Shown one piece after another: positions 11,214-63,686 of a stretch of DNA of 64,000 bases. The notes under the pieces are model-generated. The model saw only the letters and a list, made by a program, of their open reading frames with translations, did no database searches and was not told where the DNA came from. Every line of letters begins with the position of its first letter. The stretch's first letter is position 1. The position numbers and the translations under genes are program-made. The stretch spans positions 1 to 64,000 of the IMG/VR virus record IMGVR_UViG_3300035181_000471, one strand, 5' to 3'.

Positions 11214-12452
11214 TTATAGGTCATCGTCATCGAAGTCGGTAATGCGAATGGCATCCCCACTCTCAAGGCTCTCAGAGTCGCCAGCGAGGAACTTCTCAGC
11301 CGGACTGATCTCAGCGGTGTAAGCGCCATGATCTTCGTTGACGGCATCAATCACTAGCAGACGAAGGCGACCTAGAATCTCATAATCTGGCTCAGTTACG
11401 AGGTTACGAATAGCCTCATCCTTGGAGTCAAACACGATAATAGGCTTCTCTTCATCACCGACGATATAACGCTTGCCCTTGTTAGTGATAAGGCCATACT
11501 TACGAGCTAGTTCACGAACAGAGATCCAGTCGTCAATTCCGAGACCGGGACGAAGCCAGAGGTGGAATTCACGATAACCACCAGTGGTGATCTTGTTCTT
11601 CAGAATACGAACCTTGACCTTCGTGGCAACATAGTCGCCCTTGTTATCCCCAGGCTCAAGAATGAAGGGATCATCAGCATATCCTCCAGCGCGGAAAGCC
11701 TTGGCAACATTGACTTCGATCATCTCAGAAGGGACGAAGCGAACACTGTTACCACCTGGGAGGGTGTAGTTAAGATTGGTGATAGAGGGGTACTTGGAAG
11801 CCATCATAGCTTCGTTGGTCATCTCGATTCTAGCACGAATCTGGTTAACCATCAGGAACAAGCAGTCGTACTTGATGGCGTAAGGAAGCGTGAGGTCAAA
11901 GAACTTCTGCATACCTCTGGCGTGTTCACCAACGGAAGCCTTGAAAGCAGCACCATTGAGAATTTCCTTTTCATCAACCATAGACTTCATGCGAGGGATG
12001 GAGTCGAATACGAACAGCTTGACGCCAGCCTTCATCAGAGTAATGGTCTGCTTGATTGCCTCTTCCACGGAGGAAGGACGGAAGACCACGAGAGAGCCAC
12101 GACTAGTGTCTACACCAATCTTACGGAGGTAGTCACCAGTTGCCGTGCCTTCAAAGTCGAAGATAGCCACAGGCTCGTCCTCAACTCTCTGATAGGACTT
12201 CACAGACGAATAGCAGATGGTGGATTTACCACCGTGTTCCTTGCCGTGAATGTGAATTACACGACCACCGCGAGGCATACCACGAAGACGGAGAACATCG
12301 TCAAGGACGATGGACCCGAATGGGGTAAACTTCTCTTCCGCATCACACTGTAACATTGTGGATTCGTCTAATACGCTGAGAGCTTCAAGGAAAGCGGCCT
12401 TCCTGTCTGAAGTGTTGAATTCGACATTCTTCATTGTTCTAGTTTTTGCCAT
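11214..12452 (-). CDS. recA: RecA/UvsX recombinase
   Basis: G...LD, GKEHGGKST Walker A, FVFDS, VNQIR, PGG, KNK motifs. Confidence 0.93.
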   Translation of the reverse strand: MAKTRTMKNVEFNTSDRKAAFLEALSVLDESTMLQCDAEEKFTPFGSIVLDDVLRLRGMPRGGRVIHIHGKEHGGKSTICYSSVKSYQRVEDEPVAIFDFEGTATGDYLRKIGVDTSRGSLVVFRPSSVEEAIKQTITLMKAGVKLFVFDSIPRMKSMVDEKEILNGAAFKASVGEHARGMQKFFDLTLPYAIKYDCLFLMVNQIRARIEMTNEAMMASKYPSITNLNYTLPGGNSVRFVPSEMIEVNVAKAFRAGGYADDPFILEPGDNKGDYVATKVKVRILKNKITTGGYREFHLWLRPGLGIDDWISVRELARKYGLITNKGKRYIVGDEEKPIIVFDSKDEAIRNLVTEPDYEILGRLRLLVIDAVNEDHGAYTAEISPAEKFLAGDSESLESGDAIRITDFDDDDL

Positions 12453-12461
12453 GAGTGGCTC

Positions 12462-13259
12462 CTATATGTTAACTTCAAGTTTTTCAAGACGCTTCTTAGG
12501 GGGAATCCTGGCGTCCTTAATACTAATACTGTAGGTTTTGGTCTCGTACTTGAACCAGTAGTTAGGATTGTAAAGAATCCCCTTTTTGATGATCTTCTGG
12601 TTGCGTCCTTTACCCTTTACAACATCAGAGAAGTCACACAAAGCAAGCATAACTTTCTCCGGCATGGTCTTGATATCTTGGCCTAAGAATAGATCACTAG
12701 CATGACGGCCAAACTGACCCAATAAGACTGCATCGCAGGCGTCTGAATCAATCCCTGGATACTCAATTGCATTGGCGTATTCGTGCGCCTTACGGATGTT
12801 CTCGTGTTTATTATTACCCTTCTCCACTAGGCCAAGGCAAGAGCGCAGGGTCATAGCATTGATATGCATGACACACACTTCCTTGAAGGCGTGAGTGACT
12901 GAAGGTAGGACTTTGGATTGGATGATTTTGTTTACAATGTTGAGCCAGTCGTTGCCTGGAGTTGGAGCTTCAAGTGAAATAATCAGGCCCTTCTCAGAGT
13001 CAGCGTGAGCCAGGATAGAGGTGGTGATAAAATCAGCCATCATCACAGAACGAACCCACACGGGATAACTAGAATCGGCTGGCTTCAAGGATTTAATTAG
13101 TTCCCACTTAGGGCCATCAACGGTGTTTGTCATGACCGCTAGTCCTGTTCTGCTTAGCGAGGGGTCAATGCCGACAATCACCCATTCATTCATGTCTCTT
13201 GGAGTAGGGATTTTTACTTTGTCATCGAAGGTTAGTTTTGGTTTTGCTACTCTTGCCAT
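12462..13259 (-). CDS. RuvC-like Holliday junction resolvase
   Basis: IVGIDPSLSRTG, ISLE, DACDA acidic residues. Confidence 0.8.
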   Translation of the reverse strand: MARVAKPKLTFDDKVKIPTPRDMNEWVIVGIDPSLSRTGLAVMTNTVDGPKWELIKSLKPADSSYPVWVRSVMMADFITTSILAHADSEKGLIISLEAPTPGNDWLNIVNKIIQSKVLPSVTHAFKEVCVMHINAMTLRSCLGLVEKGNNKHENIRKAHEYANAIEYPGIDSDACDAVLLGQFGRHASDLFLGQDIKTMPEKVMLALCDFSDVVKGKGRNQKIIKKGILYNPNYWFKYETKTYSISIKDARIPPKKRLEKLEVNI

Positions 13260-21351: not shown

Positions 21352-24300
21352 CTACTCATCCTCTTTTTCTGACTGATCGTCAGCGTCATAGCAAGAATCA
21401 CTACAGAATACTTCCATATCTCCACTTCTGACTAGCACTTCAGAAGGATTTAGAATGGGTTTGTTACAATAATGGCAAGTTGGGTATTCATCCCTAGCCC
21501 ATTCCAAGGTGGGTTCAGATAGATCCTGCAAGGACCAAGTGTCTACGAGATCTTCGAATAGAGTTAGAGGATCGACATGGTTGGTGCGAGTAACATAATC
21601 CCAGCTAATCTGCTTTGGATCAGTGAAAATAATTCCTCTGGTTAGGACTTTTTCTAGTTTCGGGTCCACATTGGCTGTTTCCATCGCGTTAGTAAATTCT
21701 TTGTAGTTTTCTGGGGTCAGGTAAATGAGGCTGTCATATTGACGAGGTTCCAGCTTGAAAAGACGGAGGCTATGAGTTAGAAATTCAGAAGATGCGTAAC
21801 TATCATAGGCCCAAAGGCTATCTAGCCATGTTGGGCAGAGCTTAAAGGCATCAACTAGAGTGAACGAAGGCTTAGCTCTCTTTACATCTTCGATGAGGGT
21901 AGCTCCGAAAGAGGTCTTCCATACAGCTCTAGACATATCGTCAATTAGGTCTTTCACCTTATGGTAGATGAACCCGCCTTTAATAAGGCGATTAACCTCA
22001 GGGTCATGTTCTCCTACAAACTGCATGTATTCCCAGTAAGTATCGTTAGCAACCCAGTAGGCTTGAACATCTTCACCGTATTCCCCGACATAAATTCTAT
22101 CTCCGAGATCTCCGCTCTTGGTATTTTGGCACTCAATATAGTCAAGATCAGGGCAATAGATTTGAGCTAGTTTATCAGAAGTATCGTCTGCGGGTGCAGT
22201 AGGGTCAGCATCTTGGGTGATTACATAAAGAGGGCCGGATTCTAAGTAATTCCTGGAGGTTCTTTCACCTTGAGTACACCAATTGGTGCCTTGTGACATG
22301 ATAACAGAAGCCTCGGGAGTAGTGATTCTGTAGAGAATGAGATCCCCTCTGCGTCCGACTACTTCGCATCCTTCTCTAAAGTATTTATCCCTCTGTCTGT
22401 CGATCTCTTTTCTCTGCTCGTTCTTAGATAGATCAGATCTTGTAGCGGAGGCTACTGCGTTGACTAGAGACTCGTAGTGATACTGATTGATGTCCCCGGA
22501 ATTGAGTTCTCTAAATGGAGTGCCTGGACGCTTGAGCATCGAGAATCTCTCAAGGAGGGCCGTAACCTCCCCAGCATTAGGAGCGTTGGGGTTCACGATG
22601 GAGCGAAGGGCCAATCTCTTGTTTTTATACTCTCTGCATAGCCAATCAACATACTCTCCATTAGGAGATGAGTCGATGCTATCCATTGCACCAACAACGG
22701 ATTCAGGAATGCCATACTTCTTCACTAGGGCATCATGCTTAGCCTTAGAGATAGCGGCCATTTTCTTACGAGAGGTCTTTGCAGAAGTTACCTTGAATGT
22801 GAAATCGGGATTGAGGTACCCGCCACGAACTAGTGAAGCTTTGATGTCACGGATACCCCAGCTAGACTCAAATTCTCCCTGAACATAGTCAAAGGCCCCA
22901 TCACGGAAATCCGACTCACCATCCTGATTGATAGCTTCGACTAGTGGAGCCACAAGATCTCTGGCCTTTTCAAACAAGTCCAGTGGGACACCGGGGTATA
23001 GTGACTCTCTTCTTGCATCTCCAGCACGAATAGCGCCGTTGATTGAGCTAAGATGCCATCTGATGTCTACGGTATCGAGGTCGATAGGAGCTTCGGTGTG
23101 GCTTTCATTATAAATGTCCACAGCCCTTTTTGTCACTTCAAAATACTTCTTCAGCGGTGACCCAGGTGAAGTCTTCAACTTCTCCCACTCTTTTTGTGCT
23201 TTTTCAGCTTTATCCTTGAATTCCTTGCTTTCTTTAGCTTCTTCTTGTTCAATTACATCGGAGAACGGAGCGAAGATCTCATCAATAGACTCCTTAATGA
23301 ATTCATCTCTAACCTCATCCCAACAGCTATCGCAATAGGATTCTCCAGCAGCTTGTAAAAAGTGCATATCATCGGAATCATAGCTCTCGCCACAACGAGG
23401 GCAATACTCTCTCTGAGCATCATTATAGCAATCGTCACACAGCATCTCGCCATTGTACTCGTTTAGGTCACGAGCCTCAAATTCACCCCCACAGTTATCG
23501 CAAGTAGCCTCATCCCTAGGGATTTCATCTCTGTTCTGAGAGATGGTGTGATCACTAATGTAGTCATTGATTATCTCGTCATGATGCGATAAGAATTCAA
23601 AGAACTTCCAGTATTCTGGCTTGTTGACCCAGTATCCACCACCTACATTACGACCTACATCTCGGCCATCTACATCCTGAGCTTCAATGCGACTTGGCTC
23701 ATCAGGAACGAAAATCTGAAGGAACTTGTCATCGTTATAGCTATTTTTGGCTTCACTCCCAGGCAGAGTAAAGATGTAAAGCGGGGCCATAGCTAGGTAG
23801 CCTGGACCATAGGCGGTTCCTCGGGTACACCAGTGAGTGTTCTTGCCTAGAATTTCAGAGGCTTGCATGGTGGTAACCCTGAAACAAAGATACCCACCCT
23901 CTACTTCACCTAAATATTCGCTGCCTTCTGTCAGATATTTTTGCTTGTTCTTTTCTATGTCTTCTTTGCGCTTGCGCTCCTGTTCCTTCTTGGACATATC
24001 TTCATTCGTAGTGGCCTCCATAGCAGCCACAAGAGTTGAAACGGTGTAGGAGTTGATATCACCTGAATTGGTCTGTCTAAAGGGGGTTCCTGGCCTCTTT
24101 ACGATACTGAATCTCTGAAGAACGGAAGTGATGTAGTCCTCTCTCGCACCAGAGGATGCAATTTCACCCCTACTTTGGGCCTTGCAGAGCCAGTCGGTAT
24201 ACTCCCCATTGGGTGTTGGATCAATATTAGACAAGGTTTCAACCAGAACGGGGTCTAGCTTGTATTTTTTAGCCAGGGCGTCTTTCTTAGCCTGGGATGC

Positions 24301-26040
24301 GGCTGCGTCTTTGATCAGAAGTCCGTTGTTCCAGGAGGATTCCTTGAGATGAAAGGTTCCATCCTCATTTAGATAGTCATACAACACCAAGATAGATCTG
24401 ATGTCTCTGTTTTTAGAATCAAAATCTCTTTTCACATCATCAATGGCTTCATCAACTAGATGCTCAAAGTTTTCCTCAATTCGTGTATACAGGGGATTCA
24501 GGGTATCATAGACTTTGACAAATTCTTCTTCGGAGATTCCAGGGTAGATTCTAGCTCTGTTCTCATTTGATGTCCAGGACGCAGAACGAGCGGTGGCTAA
24601 TTGCCAACTAATTCGTGCCATAATTTCAGGTGAGATTTTATCATAGATAGCTCTACGACCATTTAGATCTTTAACTATATCTCTGATTTTCTGGAAGTAG
24701 CTAGCTAAGGGGGAGTCTGGGCTATTGTATAGATTATCCCACTCTTCTTCGGCCTCCTCGCTATCTGCGTTCACTTGTGGTTCAAAGGGGGATAGGAGAC
24801 TGACCACAGTCTCCTTAATATAATCGTAATTGGCGTCTTTGAAGCACTCTTCTGAGCAAAAAGTCTTATGAGTTCTACTGTCTGGGACTCCATCTTCCAG
24901 TCTAAAGGTACTATCACAATAGTCACATACTTTTCTCCCATCCCAGTAGTCTTCCTCTGTTTTACAGATGGTGTTGTCTTCGATGTAATTTTTGATGACT
25001 GGATCAAACTTAGCGATGAATTCAAAAAGTTCCCAGAATTCACTTCTGGACACTATATACCCATCGTCTAGGTGTTCACCCAAGTCATCGCCATTGATGT
25101 CCTGGCATTCAATTCTGTCAGGGTGATGGCTTGGTGCAAAGATCTGGCAGAACTTATCACTAGCATAGTCTTCGTTGTCTTCACCAGGAGTTGTGACTAC
25201 ATAAAGAGGACCGTACTTTAGATAGCTAGCGGCGTAGCCCTCCCCCTTTGTACACCAGTGGGTGTCCTTGGATAGCACCTGAGATGCTTCCACGGTGGTA
25301 ACCTTGTAAACTCGGAATGGTCCGGTATCACCTAGAAGCTGACTCCCTTCAAGTGCATATTTATCCTGGTTTTGGTTCAAGTCCCTTTCTTTTTCTTTCT
25401 TGGAAAGATCGGCTCTGGAGGCAAGATCCATCTGGCGAAGGAACTCAGCAATGCTGTAGCGGTTAATGTCGGTCTGGTTCCCTAGTCTCCACTGAGGACT
25501 GTTCTTTAGCTTTTCAAATAACTCTAGCTTGCCCCTCAAGTCAGCCTTGAGAGTATCTGGTGTCTCGTTGTGACTGATGTAGTATTTGTACGCCTTACAA
25601 ATCCATTCCGTATAAGCACCATTAGCTGTTGGATCAATGTCAGCGATGAAATCAAGCTCGTCTTTAGATAGCCTGTATTTTGTCATCAGGGCGTTCTTCT
25701 TGGCGTCTGAAGCGGCGGCTAGAATAATGTGAGAAGCGGTCTTCTCTACGAGCTTCCCAGCATTGGAGCCGACTCGGGTCATCTCAAAGTCGTATTCGGC
25801 TAGATTGGCTCCGATTTCAGCCACATCTCCAAGGGTCCTGTTGTAGAAAGGTAGAGTCTTAAGCTCTCTAATTGCGACACCTACAATAACTGAACTCCTG
25901 AAGATTCTAGGAATAGAGCCGTTATTATACAAGTGCTGAACCCAGTAATAAAGGAATTGGGGCAGCACACTGGGATCGGTAACTTTGAACTTAATCGTGT
26001 TTCCGATAGCCGTAGCTAGTTTTGATTCAAATTCTAACAT
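21352..26040 (-). CDS. large triple-repeat protein with Zn ribbons
   Basis: Three copies of IDP/S..NG.Y..W.C...DIN.Y...TT..AS......T.WCT.G...YL..[GA]PLY...QI...IE.Q, separated by CxxC clusters. Confidence 0.75.
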   Translation of the reverse strand: MLEFESKLATAIGNTIKFKVTDPSVLPQFLYYWVQHLYNNGSIPRIFRSSVIVGVAIRELKTLPFYNRTLGDVAEIGANLAEYDFEMTRVGSNAGKLVEKTASHIILAAASDAKKNALMTKYRLSKDELDFIADIDPTANGAYTEWICKAYKYYISHNETPDTLKADLRGKLELFEKLKNSPQWRLGNQTDINRYSIAEFLRQMDLASRADLSKKEKERDLNQNQDKYALEGSQLLGDTGPFRVYKVTTVEASQVLSKDTHWCTKGEGYAASYLKYGPLYVVTTPGEDNEDYASDKFCQIFAPSHHPDRIECQDINGDDLGEHLDDGYIVSRSEFWELFEFIAKFDPVIKNYIEDNTICKTEEDYWDGRKVCDYCDSTFRLEDGVPDSRTHKTFCSEECFKDANYDYIKETVVSLLSPFEPQVNADSEEAEEEWDNLYNSPDSPLASYFQKIRDIVKDLNGRRAIYDKISPEIMARISWQLATARSASWTSNENRARIYPGISEEEFVKVYDTLNPLYTRIEENFEHLVDEAIDDVKRDFDSKNRDIRSILVLYDYLNEDGTFHLKESSWNNGLLIKDAAASQAKKDALAKKYKLDPVLVETLSNIDPTPNGEYTDWLCKAQSRGEIASSGAREDYITSVLQRFSIVKRPGTPFRQTNSGDINSYTVSTLVAAMEATTNEDMSKKEQERKRKEDIEKNKQKYLTEGSEYLGEVEGGYLCFRVTTMQASEILGKNTHWCTRGTAYGPGYLAMAPLYIFTLPGSEAKNSYNDDKFLQIFVPDEPSRIEAQDVDGRDVGRNVGGGYWVNKPEYWKFFEFLSHHDEIINDYISDHTISQNRDEIPRDEATCDNCGGEFEARDLNEYNGEMLCDDCYNDAQREYCPRCGESYDSDDMHFLQAAGESYCDSCWDEVRDEFIKESIDEIFAPFSDVIEQEEAKESKEFKDKAEKAQKEWEKLKTSPGSPLKKYFEVTKRAVDIYNESHTEAPIDLDTVDIRWHLSSINGAIRAGDARRESLYPGVPLDLFEKARDLVAPLVEAINQDGESDFRDGAFDYVQGEFESSWGIRDIKASLVRGGYLNPDFTFKVTSAKTSRKKMAAISKAKHDALVKKYGIPESVVGAMDSIDSSPNGEYVDWLCREYKNKRLALRSIVNPNAPNAGEVTALLERFSMLKRPGTPFRELNSGDINQYHYESLVNAVASATRSDLSKNEQRKEIDRQRDKYFREGCEVVGRRGDLILYRITTPEASVIMSQGTNWCTQGERTSRNYLESGPLYVITQDADPTAPADDTSDKLAQIYCPDLDYIECQNTKSGDLGDRIYVGEYGEDVQAYWVANDTYWEYMQFVGEHDPEVNRLIKGGFIYHKVKDLIDDMSRAVWKTSFGATLIEDVKRAKPSFTLVDAFKLCPTWLDSLWAYDSYASSEFLTHSLRLFKLEPRQYDSLIYLTPENYKEFTNAMETANVDPKLEKVLTRGIIFTDPKQISWDYVTRTNHVDPLTLFEDLVDTWSLQDLSEPTLEWARDEYPTCHYCNKPILNPSEVLVRSGDMEVFCSDSCYDADDQSEKEDE

Positions 26041-53862: not shown

Positions 53863-54474
53863 TTACAGAAGTTCGAAGTTTCTGTGGTACCAGAAACCGT
53901 CTTGGAAAGTGTTCATAATGGCAACAGCGGTAATCTTGTTGTCCATGTCTGGCTCTCTCCAAATTGTTTTGTATTCGCCAGGACCAGTCTTCCCAGAGAG
54001 ATCTTTGCTACTGGCGTAAGGACTAGTGTCCTTTTTAGGAGTCATTAGGATGAGAGTCCCATTGGTCCAAGGAGCGAGTGGATGCTCCTTTTGAAACTGT
54101 GCGGCGGCGTGACTAGCCTGGACAACCTTTTGTGAGGTCGAGAGACTTGGATCGACAACGATGTAAAGCTTTTTGGCTCCAGGGTTGTTGAGGTAGGTCT
54201 TGAAGTGTTGAATCCCGGCCTGCATTGGGGCTAGAAGGGCCTTGTATTCTCTTTGCTTGCCTTCGGTATAGGGTAGGGTCTCACAAGGGCCTTTAGCCTT
54301 GTGTCCCGCTAATCCGCGAATCAGAGCGCGATGCTCACTGAGAGCGATATGGAGCATTCTGATTTCGGTTCTAAGGCCACCTTGCTTCTTGTGCTTTTCG
54401 ATAAGCAGTCTGAGCAAGAGTCTAGCGTTGAAGTAAGCTTCTTTTTGTTCCTGAGTGTAAGTGACATAAGCCAT
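53863..54474 (-). CDS. Pth2-like peptidyl-tRNA hydrolase with N-terminal extension
   Basis: KLYIVV...LS..Q...Q.SHA and WREPD....TAVA; start trimmed to MAYV. Confidence 0.72.
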   Translation of the reverse strand: MAYVTYTQEQKEAYFNARLLLRLLIEKHKKQGGLRTEIRMLHIALSEHRALIRGLAGHKAKGPCETLPYTEGKQREYKALLAPMQAGIQHFKTYLNNPGAKKLYIVVDPSLSTSQKVVQASHAAAQFQKEHPLAPWTNGTLILMTPKKDTSPYASSKDLSGKTGPGEYKTIWREPDMDNKITAVAIMNTFQDGFWYHRNFELL

Positions 54475-54551
54475 GTTTTTCTCCTTTAGAATGGTTGGCT
54501 GGTTTGTTAGCGGCAACTTCTAAGGATGGCTTATGGTGAGCGTGATGGCAC

Positions 54552-54575
54552 CTAGAGGTGATTTCTCCCGGTCAT
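54552..54575 (-). promoter_or_regulatory. uORF MTGRNHL-amber upstream of the Pth-like gene
   Basis: AAGGAG-N6-ATG, TAG stop; next in-frame stop TAA at 54531. Confidence 0.5.
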
Positions 54576-54602
54576 ATTATACTCCTTTATGGTTAAGTAA
54601 AA

Positions 54603-54680
54603 TGGTGCCCTCGGAGGAATTCGAATCCCCGATCAAGGTTTTAGAGACCCCAGCTTTAGGCCAGACTAAGCTACGAGGGC
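54603..54680 (-). tRNA. amber suppressor tRNA (anticodon CTA)
   Basis: Perfect acceptor GCCCTCG/CGAGGGC, A73, loop CT CTA AA, TTCGAAT, CCA. Confidence 0.88.
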
Positions 54681-56142: not shown

Positions 56143-56964
56143 TTACTGGTGTATCTTGTGTCGCCTATCATTAAAGGAGAACTCAATATACTCTACTTTC
56201 TGGTTACCAGTGAATTTAGTCTTGAATTGTTCAATATATTTATTAGCTTTGCCCTTTTTGACATATGCTATTGTAGTATGAGGCGCATAGTCAGGGAATG
56301 AATTGGCGTTATCTGGGTAGACTTCATTGCAATAATCGAATAAATCCTGGAGTTCTGGACTCTTTTCAACCTTTATAATGAGAACATCGTATGGTGCATC
56401 AGCGGGAGTGAACTGGCTTAAACCTAACCACTCAACCGACTTGACTTCTAGGCTTGGGTTGAACTTGTCTGGTGTTTGGTCCTTAATTCCGTAGAGACAA
56501 GTAATGTGGGGGTAGTCCTCTTTTCCCTTGATCTCTCCATCGGTGTAGACATCCTCTGGATCAACACTTTCAACGAACTCTAGAATTTTCTTAGTGACCT
56601 CTGGAGCGTAAGTCAACTGCACTGTGCTGTAGTCGTAAGCGGCTTGCTTTGTAAGGAGTCTGGCGAAAAAGGTTAGGAACCCCTTTTTACCACCTTGGCC
56701 GTAAGCTCTATCGTGATCGCCTTGAACACTAAGAATGAACAAAACTCCTTCATCAACCTTACACACGGCTCTTATTCCTTGGGATACTCGGATGGAAAGG
56801 AAGCCTGGGTTAGACTTAATTGGTTCTAAGTGGGTTCCTGCCCCATCTCTTAGCTGTTGTTCAGTGGCCTCAGTGACTTTAATCCTCAGAGCATCAAGAA
56901 GACGCTTTATATTCGGATTCTTTTTTGCCTGTTTAGTAGCGTCTTTTCCAAGTTCCATTTGCAT
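56143..56964 (-). CDS. RelE/HigB-like domain fused to a 2H phosphoesterase (Acb1/T4 57B-like)
   Basis: N: HLEP....GFLSIRV..GIRAV.......H..Y; C: PHITCLYG and FPDY.PHTTIAY. Confidence 0.8.
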   Translation of the reverse strand: MQMELGKDATKQAKKNPNIKRLLDALRIKVTEATEQQLRDGAGTHLEPIKSNPGFLSIRVSQGIRAVCKVDEGVLFILSVQGDHDRAYGQGGKKGFLTFFARLLTKQAAYDYSTVQLTYAPEVTKKILEFVESVDPEDVYTDGEIKGKEDYPHITCLYGIKDQTPDKFNPSLEVKSVEWLGLSQFTPADAPYDVLIIKVEKSPELQDLFDYCNEVYPDNANSFPDYAPHTTIAYVKKGKANKYIEQFKTKFTGNQKVEYIEFSFNDRRHKIHQ

Positions 56965-57374: not shown

Positions 57375-57465
57375 TGGGTCCGTCCTAGGGGAGTCGAACC
57401 CCTTGTGCGTAAAATTACGCTGTGGTTTAAAAGACCACGGCCTGAACCGTGCGGCAAAGGACGGA
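57375..57465 (-). tRNA. atypical tRNA, anticodon TTT (Lys), long variable arm, 8-bp acceptor
   Basis: GTGGT-CT TTT AA-ACCAC; V arm GCGTAA/TTACGC; TCCGTCCT/AGGACGGA. Confidence 0.8.
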
Positions 57466-58040: not shown

Positions 58041-58117
58041 TGGTACCCCCGGTAGGACTCAAACCTACATAATTCACCGTGTAAAGATGATGCCTAATCT
58101 CTCGGCGTCACAGGGGC
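58041..58117 (-). tRNA. tRNA-Val(TAC)
   Basis: Loop TT TAC AC. Confidence 0.85.
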
Positions 58118-58208: not shown

Positions 58209-58279
58209 TGGAAGGGCTGTAGGGAATCGAACCCTATCTGTTCGCTTCAAAGGCGAATCTGTCATCCTGTCTCAACCCT
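58209..58279 (-). tRNA. tRNA-Gln(TTG) with degenerate D arm
   Basis: TTCGC-CT TTG AA-GCGAA, good T arm, no clear D stem. Confidence 0.7.
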
Positions 58280-58738: not shown

Positions 58739-58825
58739 CGGTGATCCCAAGGGGAGTCGAACCCCTACAGTCGAGGACGCCTGGGTAAGAGCCAGGGGTG
58801 GTAGCCAGTTGCCACTATTGGGACC
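58739..58825 (-). tRNA. atypical tRNA, anticodon CTT (Lys), long V arm, foldable as 8/4, no encoded CCA
   Basis: CCTGG-CT CTT AC-CCAGG; V arm GTC/GAC; GGTCCCAA/TTGGGATC; ends ACCG. Confidence 0.75.
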
Positions 58826-60405: not shown

Positions 60406-60505
60406 ATCATCTGGATGGAGTCGAACCATCGGCCACCCGGAGTCCCCTGCAATTTGGTCCTTAACCGTGAGAGGTGGTGCGCTCTGACCGCTGAGCTACA
60501 AATGA
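60406..60505 (-). ncRNA. tRNA-like RNA with expanded anticodon domain
   Basis: Canonical acceptor, D and T arms; about 50 nt between D and T arms; no CCA. Confidence 0.65.
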
Positions 60506-60506
60506 T

Positions 60507-60586
60507 TGGTGTCCGTGGTCGGATTCGAACCGACAGTCACGACCTTCTGAGGATCGTTGCGTTGCCAGAGATTAGCATACACGGAC
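60507..60586 (-). tRNA. tRNA-Leu(CAG) with short variable loop
   Basis: Loop CT CAG AA; V loop TGACT. Confidence 0.85.
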
Positions 60587-60591
60587 ATGAT

Positions 60592-60665
60592 TGGCGAGAG
60601 TGCCAGGGGTCAAACCGGGGCCAAAGATTTTGGAGACCTTCATGCTATCGTAACACCTCACTCCC
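60592..60665 (-). tRNA. tRNA-Trp(CCA), second copy, irregular T arm
   Basis: Loop CT CCA AA; T loop TTTGACC. Confidence 0.72.
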
Positions 60666-61531: not shown

Positions 61532-61610
61532 TGGTGCAGGTAACGGGAGTCGAACCCGCAAAAACACAGCCTTCTCAGAACTGCCGCAATACCAAATAGC
61601 GTATACCTGC
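61532..61610 (-). tRNA. tRNA-Leu(GAG) with short variable loop
   Basis: Loop CT GAG AA; V loop TGTTTTT. Confidence 0.83.
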
Positions 61611-63611: not shown

Positions 63612-63686
63612 TGGTGCCAACAAAGGGATTCGAACCCTTGACAAGAAGCTTATGAGACTTCCCCCTCACCTTTCGGGCTTGCTGGC
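63612..63686 (-). tRNA. tRNA(CAT), elongator Met or Ile2
   Basis: Loop CT CAT AA. Confidence 0.82.

What the first reader, a model, noticed from the sequence alone, without database searches (positions are those of the whole stretch)
54603..54680. Amber suppressor tRNA in a phage that still uses TAG as a stop
Seen: an intact cloverleaf with CUA; genes are full length under code 11 and several (thyX, actin, TOPRIM, 1562-aa) end in TAG. The GCC start, A73 and large D loop resemble Leu tRNAs; the loop is one base from Leu-CAA, which is absent from this window. Inference: a Leu-inserting suppressor for regulated readthrough or interference with host termination.
Basis: partly seen in the sequence, partly recalled or inferred. 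Interest (0 to 1): 0.65.

Follow-up and report, generated by a model that had tools for sequence, protein, structure and literature searches.

The report
Amber tRNA, leader and hydrolase cassette
The amber-reading tRNA is real, sits in a large phage that keeps the standard genetic code, and is one part of a conserved three-part unit (tRNA, a tiny leader gene ending in TAG, and a peptidyl-tRNA-hydrolase-like gene) that probably senses and handles read-through of TAG instead of recoding the phage's genes.

Summary
A cloverleaf tRNA with anticodon CUA lies at 54603-54680 (-). Assembled contigs from three sequencing runs match it exactly. The 221-kb phage record and three relatives use the standard code with TAG as a true stop.

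Leu identity is unproven. I found no phage protein gene with a conserved extension past TAG.

The main result is new context. In all nine lineages of this clade the tRNA is followed on the same strand by two elements:
- A mini-ORF with a Shine-Dalgarno site that always ends in TAG. Its in-frame continuation is conserved as peptide (V-x-x-R-x-P-stop, or x-R-P-P-stop).
- A ~200-aa protein whose C-terminal half has the PTH2 peptidyl-tRNA hydrolase fold.

A hairpin starting just after the second stop pairs with the hydrolase gene's ribosome-binding site.

PTH2-like genes next to stop-anticodon tRNAs recur well beyond this clade: in 7 of 8 sampled distant relatives, in Lak megaphages, in a 735-kb phage, and in mycobacteriophages Bxz1 and Myrna.

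Best reading: a functional amber decoder wired into a read-through-sensing leader that switches on a hydrolase acting on acylated tRNA. Suppressor tRNAs in standard-code jumbo phages are already known. I did not find this cassette described in the papers I could search.

The parts
54603..54680 (-). tRNA with anticodon CUA (anticodon is plus-strand TAG at 54642-54644). Class I tRNA with G1-C72, A73, A36-A37-A38 and an encoded CCA.
   Evidence: ARAGORN; Rfam 55.4 bits; contigs of three runs identical; CUA invariant and stems covary across nine lineages.
54582..54588 (-). Shine-Dalgarno sequence (AAAGGAG) of the leader mini-ORF
   Evidence: Read from the sequence. A Shine-Dalgarno site stands in front of the mini-ORF in all nine lineages.
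54552..54575 (-). Leader mini-ORF: ATG ACC GGG AGA AAT CAC CTC TAG (MTGRNHL then amber). The TAG is at 54552-54554.
   Evidence: All nine lineages have a 2-8 codon mini-ORF here and all nine end in TAG. The motif occurs once per genome in a whole-genome scan.
54531..54551 (-). In-frame continuation past the amber codon: GTG CCA TCA CGC TCA CCA TAA (VPSRSP then stop). It ends in an R-x-P-stop motif like RAPP/RAGP arrest peptides.
   Evidence: The peptide is conserved while codons vary (Arg CGC/CGT/AGA; Pro CCA/CCG/CCT/CCC; stop TAA/TGA). For the arrest motifs see PMC10951233, PMC7897499 and PMC12992588.
54469..54533 (-). Predicted hairpin. The bases just 3' of the second stop (anti-SD CCUU) pair with the Shine-Dalgarno/AUG region of the hydrolase-like gene.
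   Evidence: MFE -16.0 kcal/mol, z -3.57, 1 of 200 shuffles as stable. The same arrangement appears in six other lineages with z -1.1 to -3.1.
53863..54474 (-). 203-aa protein: N-terminal three-helix domain (aa 1-97) plus C-terminal PTH2-fold peptidyl-tRNA-hydrolase-like domain (aa 100-203). ATG at 54472-54474, Shine-Dalgarno AAGGAG at 54481-54486, stop TAA.
   Evidence: AF2 model pLDDT 82.7. VIA-align Z 10.2-8.7 to six PTH2 structures, next unrelated hit 5.7. Domain profile hits PDB Pth2 at E 1.7e-5 and 2.3e-5. 27 of 30 nearest ESM Atlas clusters carry PF01981. Family alignment A3.

Best explanation
The tRNA is a working UAG decoder, but it is not there to recode or extend the phage's proteins. 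It is the first element of a three-part cassette that is probably one transcript: tRNA(CUA), a Shine-Dalgarno-led mini-ORF ending in UAG, and a gene for a PTH2-type hydrolase with an extra N-terminal helical domain.

Proposed working (inferred):
- If release factor 1 stops the leader at UAG, the ribosome leaves well short of a downstream hairpin, and the hydrolase gene's ribosome-binding site stays paired.
- If tRNA(CUA) wins at the UAG, the ribosome adds four or six more residues ending in R-x-P and reaches a second stop. This sequence resembles known arrest motifs and should terminate slowly.
- The paused ribosome melts the hairpin arm that starts right after that stop. This frees the ribosome-binding site, and the hydrolase is made.

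Hydrolase output would therefore follow the balance between amber suppression and RF1 termination. The hydrolase then most likely cleaves the ester bond of acylated tRNA. The substrate could be the charged or peptidyl form of the neighbouring tRNA(CUA), which would make a negative feedback that keeps suppression low enough for TAG to remain a stop. It could instead be peptidyl-tRNAs that build up when termination at UAG fails.

Shown here: the tRNA, the standard code, conservation of the cassette, the PTH2 fold, peptide-level conservation after the UAG, and the predicted hairpins. Inferred: read-through itself, the stall, the unmasking of the ribosome-binding site, the hydrolase's substrate, and which amino acid the tRNA carries.
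For: The tRNA is real and CUA is fixed. It has the A36-A37-A38 loop typical of tRNAs that read UNN codons.

G000, G003, G004 and G005 all use the standard code.

Every homologue of the partner protein that I examined has a CUA tRNA 90-200 nt upstream on the same strand: window, G005, G004, G003, L072-L077 and L081-L088. The flanking genes and tRNAs differ among these loci, and in L074 the pair stands alone.

All nine leader mini-ORFs end in TAG, and the conserved continuation ends R-x-P-stop with synonymous codon variation. This pattern occurs exactly once per genome, at the cassette. The same pattern with TAA or TGA in the middle gives 3 hits in 851 kb.

In seven lineages a hairpin pairs the ribosome-binding site or AUG with the bases just after the second stop, with z -3.57 to -1.10.

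PTH2 homology is supported by fold, profile and Atlas searches. An invariant Glu aligns with the Asp of the RDAG motif of M. jannaschii Pth2.

The link extends beyond the clade. Of 8 sampled distant PTH2-like genes, 7 have a stop-anticodon tRNA within 2 kb. The same holds for Lak phages (tRNA-UUA), Bxz1 and Myrna (tRNA-CUA), and the 735-kb phage LR756501, which also has a leader reading MS-TAG-SRPP-stop.

None of the 20 partner genes ends in TAG.

Precedents: RAPP-like arrest peptides (PMC10951233, PMC12992588) and a leader whose stall depends on stop-codon read-through (PepNL, PMC11890864).
Against: There is no expression, charging or ribosome data, and no RNA run holds the locus.

The R-x-P-stop stall is inferred by analogy. 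Known RAPP and RAGP arrests have Pro-tRNA, not a release factor, in the A site.

Hairpin z-scores are weak in four of the seven lineages.

The nine lineages share ancestry, so they are not independent events.

The strict leader motif was not found beside the stand-alone PTH2-like genes of Bxz1, Myrna, Lak or the eight sampled relatives, so the sensor part may be specific to this clade.

In LR756501 the leader precedes a 150-aa ORF that shows no similarity to the partner protein.

The Lys of the Pth2 GKGK motif is not conserved across the superfamily, so hydrolase activity is not assured.

The Pfam PTH2 model itself scores below its threshold.
Confidence: 0.5

Rival explanations
1. A stand-alone amber suppressor. 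It would insert Leu or another residue at TAG to make C-terminally extended phage proteins at a regulated rate, or to disturb host termination. The neighbouring hydrolase would be just another translation accessory gene in the tRNA region.
For: The tRNA looks like a competent decoder. TAG ends 13-20% of conserved genes, so targets exist. Cultured jumbo phages XacN1 and RsoM2USA also carry CUA tRNAs under the standard code (PMC5852040, PMC8504454). A73 and the clade's short Leu tRNAs leave Leu possible.
Against: Among 132 TAG-terminated ORFs of four genomes with extensions of at least 10 codons, none has an extension conserved in a relative. Orthologues end at the same place with TAA, TGA or TAG. 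The two long in-frame TAG junctions join separate genes: RuvC-like to UvsX, and radical SAM to an unknown ORF. There is no TAG-specific excess of back-up stops. This reading does not explain the strict linkage to the amber-ended leader and the PTH2-like gene. The XacN1 authors also found nothing behind amber stops (PMC5852040).
Confidence: 0.15
2. The tRNA and hydrolase form an RF1-independent release or rescue device. The tRNA brings UAG recognition, the PTH2-like protein cuts the nascent chain from tRNA, and together they clear ribosomes waiting at UAG when RF1 is scarce.
For: The pairing of a stop-anticodon tRNA with a peptidyl-tRNA-hydrolase fold holds across very different phages, including TAG-recoded Lak phages where the neighbour is tRNA-UUA. 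The same phages carry other rescue parts: tmRNA in G004 and G005, and a 195-aa RF-1-domain ORF in G004. TAG remains a true stop. No RF1 or RF2 is encoded in G000, G005 or G006.
Against: No known PTH2 acts on the ester bond inside a 70S ribosome. The conserved peptide after the leader UAG argues that the tRNA donates an amino acid and translation continues. In Lak, a UUA tRNA would also meet the sense TAG codons by wobble.
Confidence: 0.12
3. This is a transitional state on the way to TAG recoding. The suppressor would have been acquired before in-frame TAG codons accumulate, as in the Borges et al. model.
For: Suppressor tRNAs occur in standard-code relatives of recoded phages (10.1101/2021.08.26.457843). 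A homologous PTH2-like gene with a stop-anticodon tRNA is present in TAG-recoded Lak phages.
Against: TAG is not depleted: 40 of 213 stops in G000, 87 of 381 in G004 and 42 of 229 in G005. GC content is 42-50%, not low. The standard-code state with the cassette persists across lineages whose UvsX proteins are only 54-72% identical and whose partner proteins are 39-49% identical. That pattern indicates a stable arrangement.
Confidence: 0.08
4. The tRNA serves as a stop-anticodon (orthogonal) carrier of an amino acid for a non-ribosomal reaction carried out by the PTH2-like protein. Alternatively it is a decoy or target in a conflict with host tRNA-directed defences.
For: The acceptor stem sequence is free to vary apart from G1-C72 and mostly A73, which is unusual for a tRNA tied to one synthetase. 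The N-terminal domain of the partner is highly conserved with no known fold match. RNA-repair-type genes lie nearby: a 2H phosphoesterase-like ORF at 56143-56964 and RNA ligase in L075.
Against: The amber-ended leader with a translated continuation points to ribosomal decoding. No transferase-like domain is present.
Confidence: 0.08

Closest known systems
Suppressor tRNA(CUA) genes of standard-code jumbo phages (Xanthomonas phage XacN1, Ralstonia phage RsoM2USA; also Sup-UCA of Agrobacterium phage Atu_ph07 and Sup-UUA of phage G)
   Same: A stop-anticodon tRNA among dozens of phage tRNAs, standard code, and no identified read-through targets (PMC5852040, PMC8504454, PMC6102473, PMC12484599). 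XacN1 and Atu_ph07 also encode peptidyl-tRNA hydrolases.
   Different: Those papers treat the tRNA as an isolated curiosity. Here it is tied to an amber-ended leader and a PTH2-like gene. I did not test whether XacN1 or RsoM2USA have the same cassette.
Suppressor tRNAs of TAG-recoded phages (Lak megaphages, crAss-like phages; genetic code 15)
   Same: Phage-encoded CUA tRNA acting in a standard-code host. Lak phages carry a homologue of the PTH2-like domain (E 2e-9) just downstream of a stop-anticodon tRNA.
   Different: Recoded phages have many in-frame TAG codons in late genes, and this phage and its relatives have none. In Lak the adjacent tRNA is UUA, and the N-terminal part is a separate ORF.
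PTH2 peptidyl-tRNA hydrolases (Pfam PF01981; archaeal Pth2, human PTRH2/Bit1), including the 'peptidyl tRNA hydrolase' of cluster C mycobacteriophages (Bxz1 gp154, Myrna gp84)
   Same: Same fold over the whole domain (Z 8.7-10.2, rmsd 2.5-2.7 A over 94-96 residues). The AVQ..HA motif and the C-terminal LKLL are shared. Bxz1 and Myrna have a CUA tRNA as a close neighbour.
   Different: The catalytic-site motif RDAG.TQ is replaced by R/x-E-P-D-x-x-N, and the Pfam model scores below its cut-off. This clade adds a conserved 97-aa helical domain. Activity is untested.
Arrest-peptide leaders that control a downstream gene by ribosome stalling (SecM-secA, RAPP peptides ApdA/ApdP, TnaC, ErmCL) and the read-through-sensitive leader PepNL
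   Same: A short upstream ORF with an R-x-P type C-terminus, a stall next to a hairpin that hides the next gene's ribosome-binding site, and (as in PepNL) an outcome set by competition between a release factor and a tRNA at a stop codon (PMC10951233, PMC7897499, PMC11890864).
   Different: Here the arrest-like part is reached only after an amber codon is read by a dedicated phage tRNA encoded immediately upstream. The regulated gene is a tRNA hydrolase. Stalling itself is not shown.
Autoregulation of release factor 2 (prfB) through an in-frame UGA
   Same: A translation-termination component is regulated by how a stop codon in its own leader or reading frame is decoded. I recall this from established knowledge and did not test it here.
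   Different: prfB uses a +1 frameshift within the gene. Here a separate leader, read-through and probably a stall are used.

Membership tests
tRNA (Rfam RF00005), elongator type | Cloverleaf scoring above the family threshold, with 7-bp acceptor stem, T loop and 7-nt anticodon loop | tested here: met
   55.4 bits against a gathering score of 29; ARAGORN structure; 14 of 17 pairs covary in nine lineages.
Amber suppressor tRNA | Anticodon CUA in a normal anticodon loop | tested here: met
   Loop C-U-C-U-A-A-A. CUA is identical in contigs of three runs and invariant in nine lineages.
Amber suppressor tRNA | Inserts an amino acid at UAG in vivo | not testable with these tools
   There is only indirect support: the peptide-level conservation of the codons after the leader's UAG.
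Bacterial tRNA-Leu | Long variable arm (class II), A73, Leu-type D-loop architecture | tested here: inconclusive
   The variable loop is 4-5 nt, so the class II feature is not met, while A73 is met. However, this clade's own Leu-anticodon tRNAs include 77-80 nt forms without a long arm. The nearest database tRNAs are Sup, Met, Trp and Gln, not Leu.
Bacterial tRNA-Gln (E. coli GlnRS rules, recalled from the literature) | U1-A72, G2-C71, G3-C70, G73, U35 | tested here: not met
   The acceptor stem is G1-C72, C2-G71, C3-G70 with A73. Only U35 fits. The anticodon arm is nevertheless identical to a T5-like tRNA-Gln(CUG) apart from position 36.
Stop-codon-recoded phage (genetic code 15) | In-frame TAG in conserved genes; higher coding density when TAG is read as sense | tested here: not met
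   Coding coverage is 94.6% under code 11 and 95.5% with TAG read as sense, with no longer genes. No alignment to a relative spans a TAG.
PTH2 peptidyl-tRNA hydrolase (PF01981) | PTH2 alpha/beta fold over the whole domain | tested here: met
   Z 10.2, 9.7, 9.6, 9.6, 9.4 and 8.7 to 1q7s, 1wn2, 2zv3, 1xty, 1rlk and 3erj, with the next unrelated chain at 5.7. Atlas TM 0.79 to a viral PTH2 cluster.
PTH2 peptidyl-tRNA hydrolase (PF01981) | Sequence match above Pfam's curated threshold | tested here: not met
   Best score is 15.9 bits against a cut-off of 23, and only 3 of 28 members hit. A profile of 33 domains does reach PDB Pth2 sequences at E 1.7e-5 and 2.3e-5.
PTH2 peptidyl-tRNA hydrolase (PF01981) | Catalytic residues and esterase activity on peptidyl-tRNA | tested here: inconclusive
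   The invariant Q and H of AVQ..HA are kept. An invariant Glu stands where M. jannaschii Pth2 has the Asp of RDAG. The Lys of GKGK is not conserved. Activity cannot be tested here.
Ribosome-arrest leader peptides (RAPP/RAGP type) | Conserved C-terminal R-A/G-P-P/G-like motif in a short ORF upstream of the regulated gene | tested here: inconclusive
   The extension ends RSP, RGP, RAP or RPP followed by a stop in 9 of 9 lineages. In known members the last position is a Pro codon, not a stop (PMC10951233).
Ribosome-arrest leader peptides (RAPP/RAGP type) | Stall demonstrated, and stall-dependent opening of the downstream ribosome-binding site | not testable with these tools
   Only predicted hairpins that pair the ribosome-binding site or AUG with bases next to the second stop.

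The most novel reading that the evidence does not exclude
Large phages carry a self-contained device for controlling amber decoding. It consists of a dedicated tRNA(CUA), a leader peptide that reports the tRNA-versus-RF1 contest at one UAG through a read-through-dependent arrest, and a divergent PTH2 hydrolase made in response, which acts on the acylated suppressor or on peptidyl-tRNAs. The wider pairing of PTH2-like genes with stop-anticodon tRNAs spans about 830 protein clusters, Lak megaphages and some 200 cluster C mycobacteriophages. It would be a general, so far undescribed module that explains why standard-code phages keep suppressor tRNAs, and it may be the raw material from which recoding evolved.
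Probability: 0.4. Interest if true: 0.85.

Novelty: new variant of a known kind. Interest (0 to 1): 0.78.

Why it matters
Suppressor tRNAs in phages that keep the standard code have been reported several times with no function found. This locus offers a concrete, testable answer. The tRNA belongs to a conserved unit with its own amber-ended sensor ORF and a tRNA hydrolase.

If the model holds, it would:
- add a new kind of translational feedback circuit, in which a stop-codon contest is read out by an arrest peptide;
- give a function to a large family of unannotated phage proteins;
- link standard-code and TAG-recoded phages through a shared module.

The same gene pair occurs in cultured mycobacteriophages such as Bxz1, so it can be tested at the bench. 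The parts (a natural amber tRNA with a built-in regulator) may also interest people who engineer genetic codes.

Tried and rejected
- Sequencing error or a mutated Leu-CAA: rejected.
- Recoding of TAG, TGA or TAA: rejected by coding density in four genomes.
- Conserved read-through extensions of protein genes: a first all-frame search was swamped by shadow frames. The search restricted to called genes found none.
- The two long TAG junctions (12462-13259 to 11214-12452; 135882-137249 to 137262-138701) join separate genes. Three small TAG-separated ORFs at 219559-220431 each have their own start and were judged separate genes.
- TAG avoidance in late genes: the late block avoids TGA even more, so the effect is not TAG-specific. 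Back-up stops after TAG: no signal.
- Exact-pattern search for the tRNA in IMG/VR: no match. Searches with single proteins next to the tRNA found no relatives. Relatives came through UvsX and through the family alignment.
- Sequence searches of the partner protein against Pfam, PHROGs and PDB gave nothing significant, until the fold search and a broader domain profile were used.
- A word-index search with the C-terminal domain alone found one protein only.
- PF01981 in the phage's own genome by six-frame search: no hit.
- Release factor and GlnRS/GluRS genes: none in G000.
- Rfam families (for example ribozymes) in the spacer: none.
- The 150-aa ORF behind the LR756501 leader shows no similarity to the partner family (hhalign probability 0.2%).
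- The strict leader motif was not found beside the PTH2-like genes of Bxz1, Myrna, Lak or the eight sampled relatives.
- Promoter and terminator scans were at chance level.
- TAG=Q was named only for the Lak locus, whose recoding is published. In scripts, TAG was read as X.
- Complex prediction was not used, because it does not take RNA.
Full report
**1. The observation**

ARAGORN finds 36 tRNA genes on the minus strand between 53.6 and 64 kb of the window. One of them, at 54603-54680, has anticodon CUA. Rfam's tRNA model scores it 55.4 bits, well above the gathering score of 29.

The sequence gives the following features:
- a 7-bp acceptor stem (GCCCUCG/CGAGGGC);
- a 4-bp D stem with an 11-nt loop;
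- anticodon loop C-U-C-U-A-A-A;
- a short variable loop (GAUC), a normal T arm, A73 and an encoded CCA.

The window is the first 64 kb of a 221,217-bp IMG/VR virus record estimated to be 77% complete. Logan contigs of three metagenome runs (microbial mat and sediment) cover the tRNA without any difference. Two of these runs may be the source samples and one is a different sample. These are contigs and not raw reads, so a read-level check is still outstanding.

**2. Genetic code**

Stop-to-stop ORFs under table 11 already cover 93.6% of the record. A greedy gene call gives 213 genes covering 94.6%, with stops TAA 130, TGA 43 and TAG 40. Reading TAG, TGA or TAA as sense adds almost nothing. Three related records behave the same way: G003 (106 kb), G004 (314 kb, complete) and G005 (211 kb).

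Among genes with a homologue in another lineage, TAG ends 17 of 126 in G000.

**3. Is read-through of phage genes selected?**

I extended every TAG-terminated gene of the four genomes to the next TAA or TGA and compared the product with the proteins of the other genomes. No alignment runs across a TAG apart from one weak paralogue hit. Orthologues end at the same residue with TAA, TGA or TAG interchangeably.

Two cases have a long in-frame downstream ORF, but these are separate genes that are also separate in the relatives: RuvC-like followed by UvsX, and radical SAM followed by an unknown ORF. Back-up stops are not enriched after TAG. The late-gene block avoids TGA at least as much as TAG. 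TAG is therefore an ordinary stop for the phage's proteins.

**4. Identity of the tRNA**

The tRNA has no long variable arm. By blastn its nearest relatives in the phage collection are:
- a CUA tRNA of the 735-kb phage LR756501;
- Met-CAU tRNAs of gut phages;
- Trp-CCA of Rhodococcus phage Peregrin;
- Gln tRNAs of a Vibrio phage and of T5-like phages.

Its anticodon arm equals that of a T5-like tRNA-Gln(CUG) except at position 36. Its acceptor stem does not fit the E. coli rules for Gln, which I recall from the literature.

Relatives G004 and G005 hold both a CAA tRNA and a CUA tRNA, and these are no more than 72% alike. The CUA tRNA is therefore not a recently mutated Leu-CAA.

This clade has unusual tRNAs, including Leu-anticodon tRNAs of only 77-80 nt with A73. 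That weakens the argument that a missing long arm rules out Leu. I leave the amino acid open, with Leu, Gln, Lys and Tyr all conceivable.

**5. The tRNA is part of a cassette**

Relatives were found through the UvsX-like recombinase, at 54-72% identity. G003, G004 and G005 each carry one CUA tRNA near their large tRNA arrays.

In G005 the gene directly downstream of the CUA tRNA is a homologue (39% identity) of the ORF directly downstream of the window's tRNA. That ORF is 53863-54474 on the minus strand, 203 aa, with a good Shine-Dalgarno site. It belongs to a family of about 200-aa proteins with no annotation.

I fetched every member I could with its DNA context, and each has a CUA tRNA 90-200 nt upstream on the same strand:
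- four lineages from assembly look-ups;
- eight IMG/VR loci, including G003 and G004, where my gene caller had picked the opposite strand.

The surrounding genes and tRNAs differ from locus to locus, and in L074 the pair is the only tRNA-related feature in 8.6 kb. Across nine lineages the tRNA's stems show compensatory changes in 14 of 17 pairs while CUA never changes.

**6. The partner protein**

An AlphaFold2 model (pLDDT 82.7) shows three long N-terminal helices and a C-terminal alpha/beta domain. That domain (residues 100-203) matches solved PTH2 peptidyl-tRNA hydrolases:
- Bit1/PTRH2, Z 10.2;
- P. horikoshii PH1539, Z 9.7;
- M. jannaschii MJ0051, Z 9.6;
- S. solfataricus Pth2, Z 9.6;
- TA0108, Z 9.4;
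- AF2095, Z 8.7.

These alignments have rmsd 2.5-2.7 A over 94-96 residues, and the next unrelated chain scores 5.7.

Other searches agree:
- The ESM Atlas lists PF01981 clusters, mostly viral, for 27 of the 30 nearest neighbours.
- Pfam's own model stays below threshold.
- A profile of 33 diverse C-terminal domains reaches PDB Pth2 sequences at E 1.7e-5 and 2.3e-5. In the printed alignment the family's invariant Glu stands opposite the Asp of the RDAG motif.

The N-terminal domain is strongly conserved (FTxEQKEAW, RALHIAMSELR, HKGPIET) and has no convincing fold match.

**7. The link holds far beyond this clade**

A profile search of 1.84 billion representatives finds 830 clusters at E <= 1e-3. 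Most are stand-alone proteins of 85-110 aa. I sampled every twentieth hit plus one longer protein. Seven of the eight have a stop-anticodon tRNA within 2 kb: five CUA, one UUA and one with an odd 8-nt loop containing CUA. Most of these tRNAs lie immediately downstream of the gene. The eighth sample sits on a 1.1-kb contig.

In annotated phages:
- Lak megaphages, which read TAG as sense, have the domain just downstream of a tRNA-UUA.
- Mycobacteriophages Bxz1 and Myrna have it next to a CUA tRNA that the records label 'tRNA-OTHER' or 'tRNA-Ser'. tblastn finds the gene in 206 Mycobacterium phage records.
- The 735-kb phage LR756501 has it 2.1 kb from two CUA tRNAs.

None of the 20 partner genes I read ends in TAG. 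The recoding and jumbo-phage papers I could search do not mention this pairing. That library is incomplete, so I cannot exclude prior description.

**8. The third part: an amber-ended leader**

The 128-nt spacer of the window holds a Shine-Dalgarno site, then ATG ACC GGG AGA AAT CAC CTC TAG (54575-54552). This continues in frame as GTG CCA TCA CGC TCA CCA TAA.

All nine lineages have such a mini-ORF of 2-8 codons, and all nine end in TAG. The continuation is six codons in seven lineages and four codons in two. Written with # for the amber codon and * for the second stop, the nine leaders are:

| Lineage | Leader |
|---|---|
| window | MTGRNHL#VPSRSP* |
| L072 | MTGKHL#VDSRSP* |
| L074 | MVGRTHL#VDNRGP* |
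| L075 | MKTL#VSPRAP* |
| L077 | MKKL#VSTRPP* |
| L081 | MFMSFNHL#VVSRSP* |
| L084 (G004) | MS#TRPP* |
| L086 | MKY#QRPP* |
| L088 (G005) | MTGRSHL#VLARSP* |

The Arg, Pro and stop codons vary synonymously (CGC/CGT/AGA; CCA/CCG/CCT/CCC; TAA/TGA). Selection therefore acts on the peptide, which can only exist if the UAG is read through.

A scan of both strands of all four genomes for this pattern finds it exactly once per genome, at the cassette. The same pattern with TAA or TGA in the middle gives three hits in 851 kb. LR756501 has MS#SRPP* just upstream of its two CUA tRNAs.

R-x-P at the end of a nascent chain resembles the RAPP, RGPP and RAGP arrest motifs (PMC10951233, PMC7897499, PMC12992588). 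A leader whose stall depends on stop-codon read-through is known from E. coli PepNL (PMC11890864).

In seven lineages the minimum-energy fold pairs the bases immediately after the second stop (CCUU, UCCU, CUCC and similar) with the Shine-Dalgarno sequence or start codon of the hydrolase-like gene. The z-scores run from -3.57 to -1.10.

**9. Model and its limits**

The simplest reading has three steps:
- tRNA(CUA) and RF1 compete at the leader's UAG.
- Read-through carries the ribosome to an R-x-P-stop, where it lingers and opens the hairpin.
- The PTH2-like protein is then translated.

What that protein does next is inference. It may hydrolyse the charged or peptidyl form of the neighbouring tRNA, giving negative feedback that keeps suppression mild and compatible with TAG as a stop. 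It may instead clear peptidyl-tRNAs when termination at UAG fails.

The presence of tmRNA and an ArfB-sized RF-1-domain ORF in relatives fits a rescue theme. No release factor or Gln/Glu synthetase is encoded in the records searched.

Nothing here shows expression, charging, stalling or enzyme activity. The nine lineages are related, and the strict leader motif was not seen next to the stand-alone PTH2-like genes outside this clade and LR756501.

**10. Verdict**

The kind of feature is known, since XacN1, RsoM2USA and others carry suppressor tRNAs under the standard code. The conserved cassette of tRNA, amber-ended arrest-like leader and PTH2-like hydrolase appears to be new, and so does the general pairing of phage PTH2-like genes with stop-anticodon tRNAs. 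Both are directly testable in cultured mycobacteriophages.

Read laying was given 3,501 letters.

Noticed in passing
window 61532-61610, 57375-57465, 58740-58825; G004 15225 and 203807; G005 185717 and 187854; G003/G004 Gln-CUG: The clade's tRNAs break the usual class rules. Leu-anticodon tRNAs are only 77-80 nt long, without a long variable arm. Lys and Gln tRNAs are 82-91 nt long with long variable arms or inserts.
   Followed up: partly
L032 2527-2930 (G004), L036 2445-2783 (G005), L098 654-1012; G004 212903-213223: tmRNA genes lie inside the phage tRNA arrays. G004 has a 195-aa ORF with an RF-1 (GGQ) domain, the size of an ArfB-type rescue factor, in its tRNA array.
   Followed up: no
window 63615-63686, 58212-58279, 60406-60505, 60510-60586, 58044-58117, 60595-60665: Six tRNA matches by Rfam are missed by ARAGORN at default settings. 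By eye they include a CAU and a UUG anticodon, and one of about 100 nt with an insert. None is CAA.
   Followed up: partly
L089 3681-3753 (Bxz1 gt155); L080 4475-4546 (Myrna gene 86): These tRNAs are annotated in GenBank as 'tRNA-OTHER' and 'tRNA-Ser', but ARAGORN calls them CUA tRNAs. Each lies next to the phage's PTH2-like 'peptidyl tRNA hydrolase' gene.
   Followed up: partly
L096 874-950: A tRNA with an 8-nt anticodon loop (ARAGORN reports 'tcta') lies 230 nt downstream of a stand-alone PTH2-like gene. It could be a CUA tRNA with an odd loop or a four-base decoder.
   Followed up: no
window 56143-56964; L072 1168-1995: A 2H-phosphoesterase / Acb1-like / 2'-5' RNA-ligase-like ORF (below Pfam thresholds) sits inside the tRNA array and recurs near the cassette in another lineage.
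   Followed up: no
G000 110000-210000 (outside the window): The plus-strand late block uses TAA almost exclusively. Of 130 TAA-terminated genes, 27 are followed in the same frame by 60 or more open codons, usually the next gene. Tight packing is the likely cause, but I did not test it.
   Followed up: no
window 21352-26040: The 1562-aa protein contains three tandem copies of a unit that exists as a single 573-aa protein in G004, plus a C-terminal zf-FCS motif and a weak HNH match.
   Followed up: no
L090 5831-5860 and 5915-6367 (LR756501): In the 735-kb phage the amber leader MS-TAG-SRPP-stop precedes a 150-aa ORF that is unrelated to the partner family, and two tandem CUA tRNAs follow. The leader may regulate different genes in different phages.
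   Followed up: partly
L091 1151-1597 (Xanthomonas phage Xoo-sp13): A weak PTH2-like match in this jumbo phage has no tRNA within 3 kb, but it lies 0.9 kb downstream of a gene annotated glutamyl-tRNA amidotransferase.
   Followed up: no
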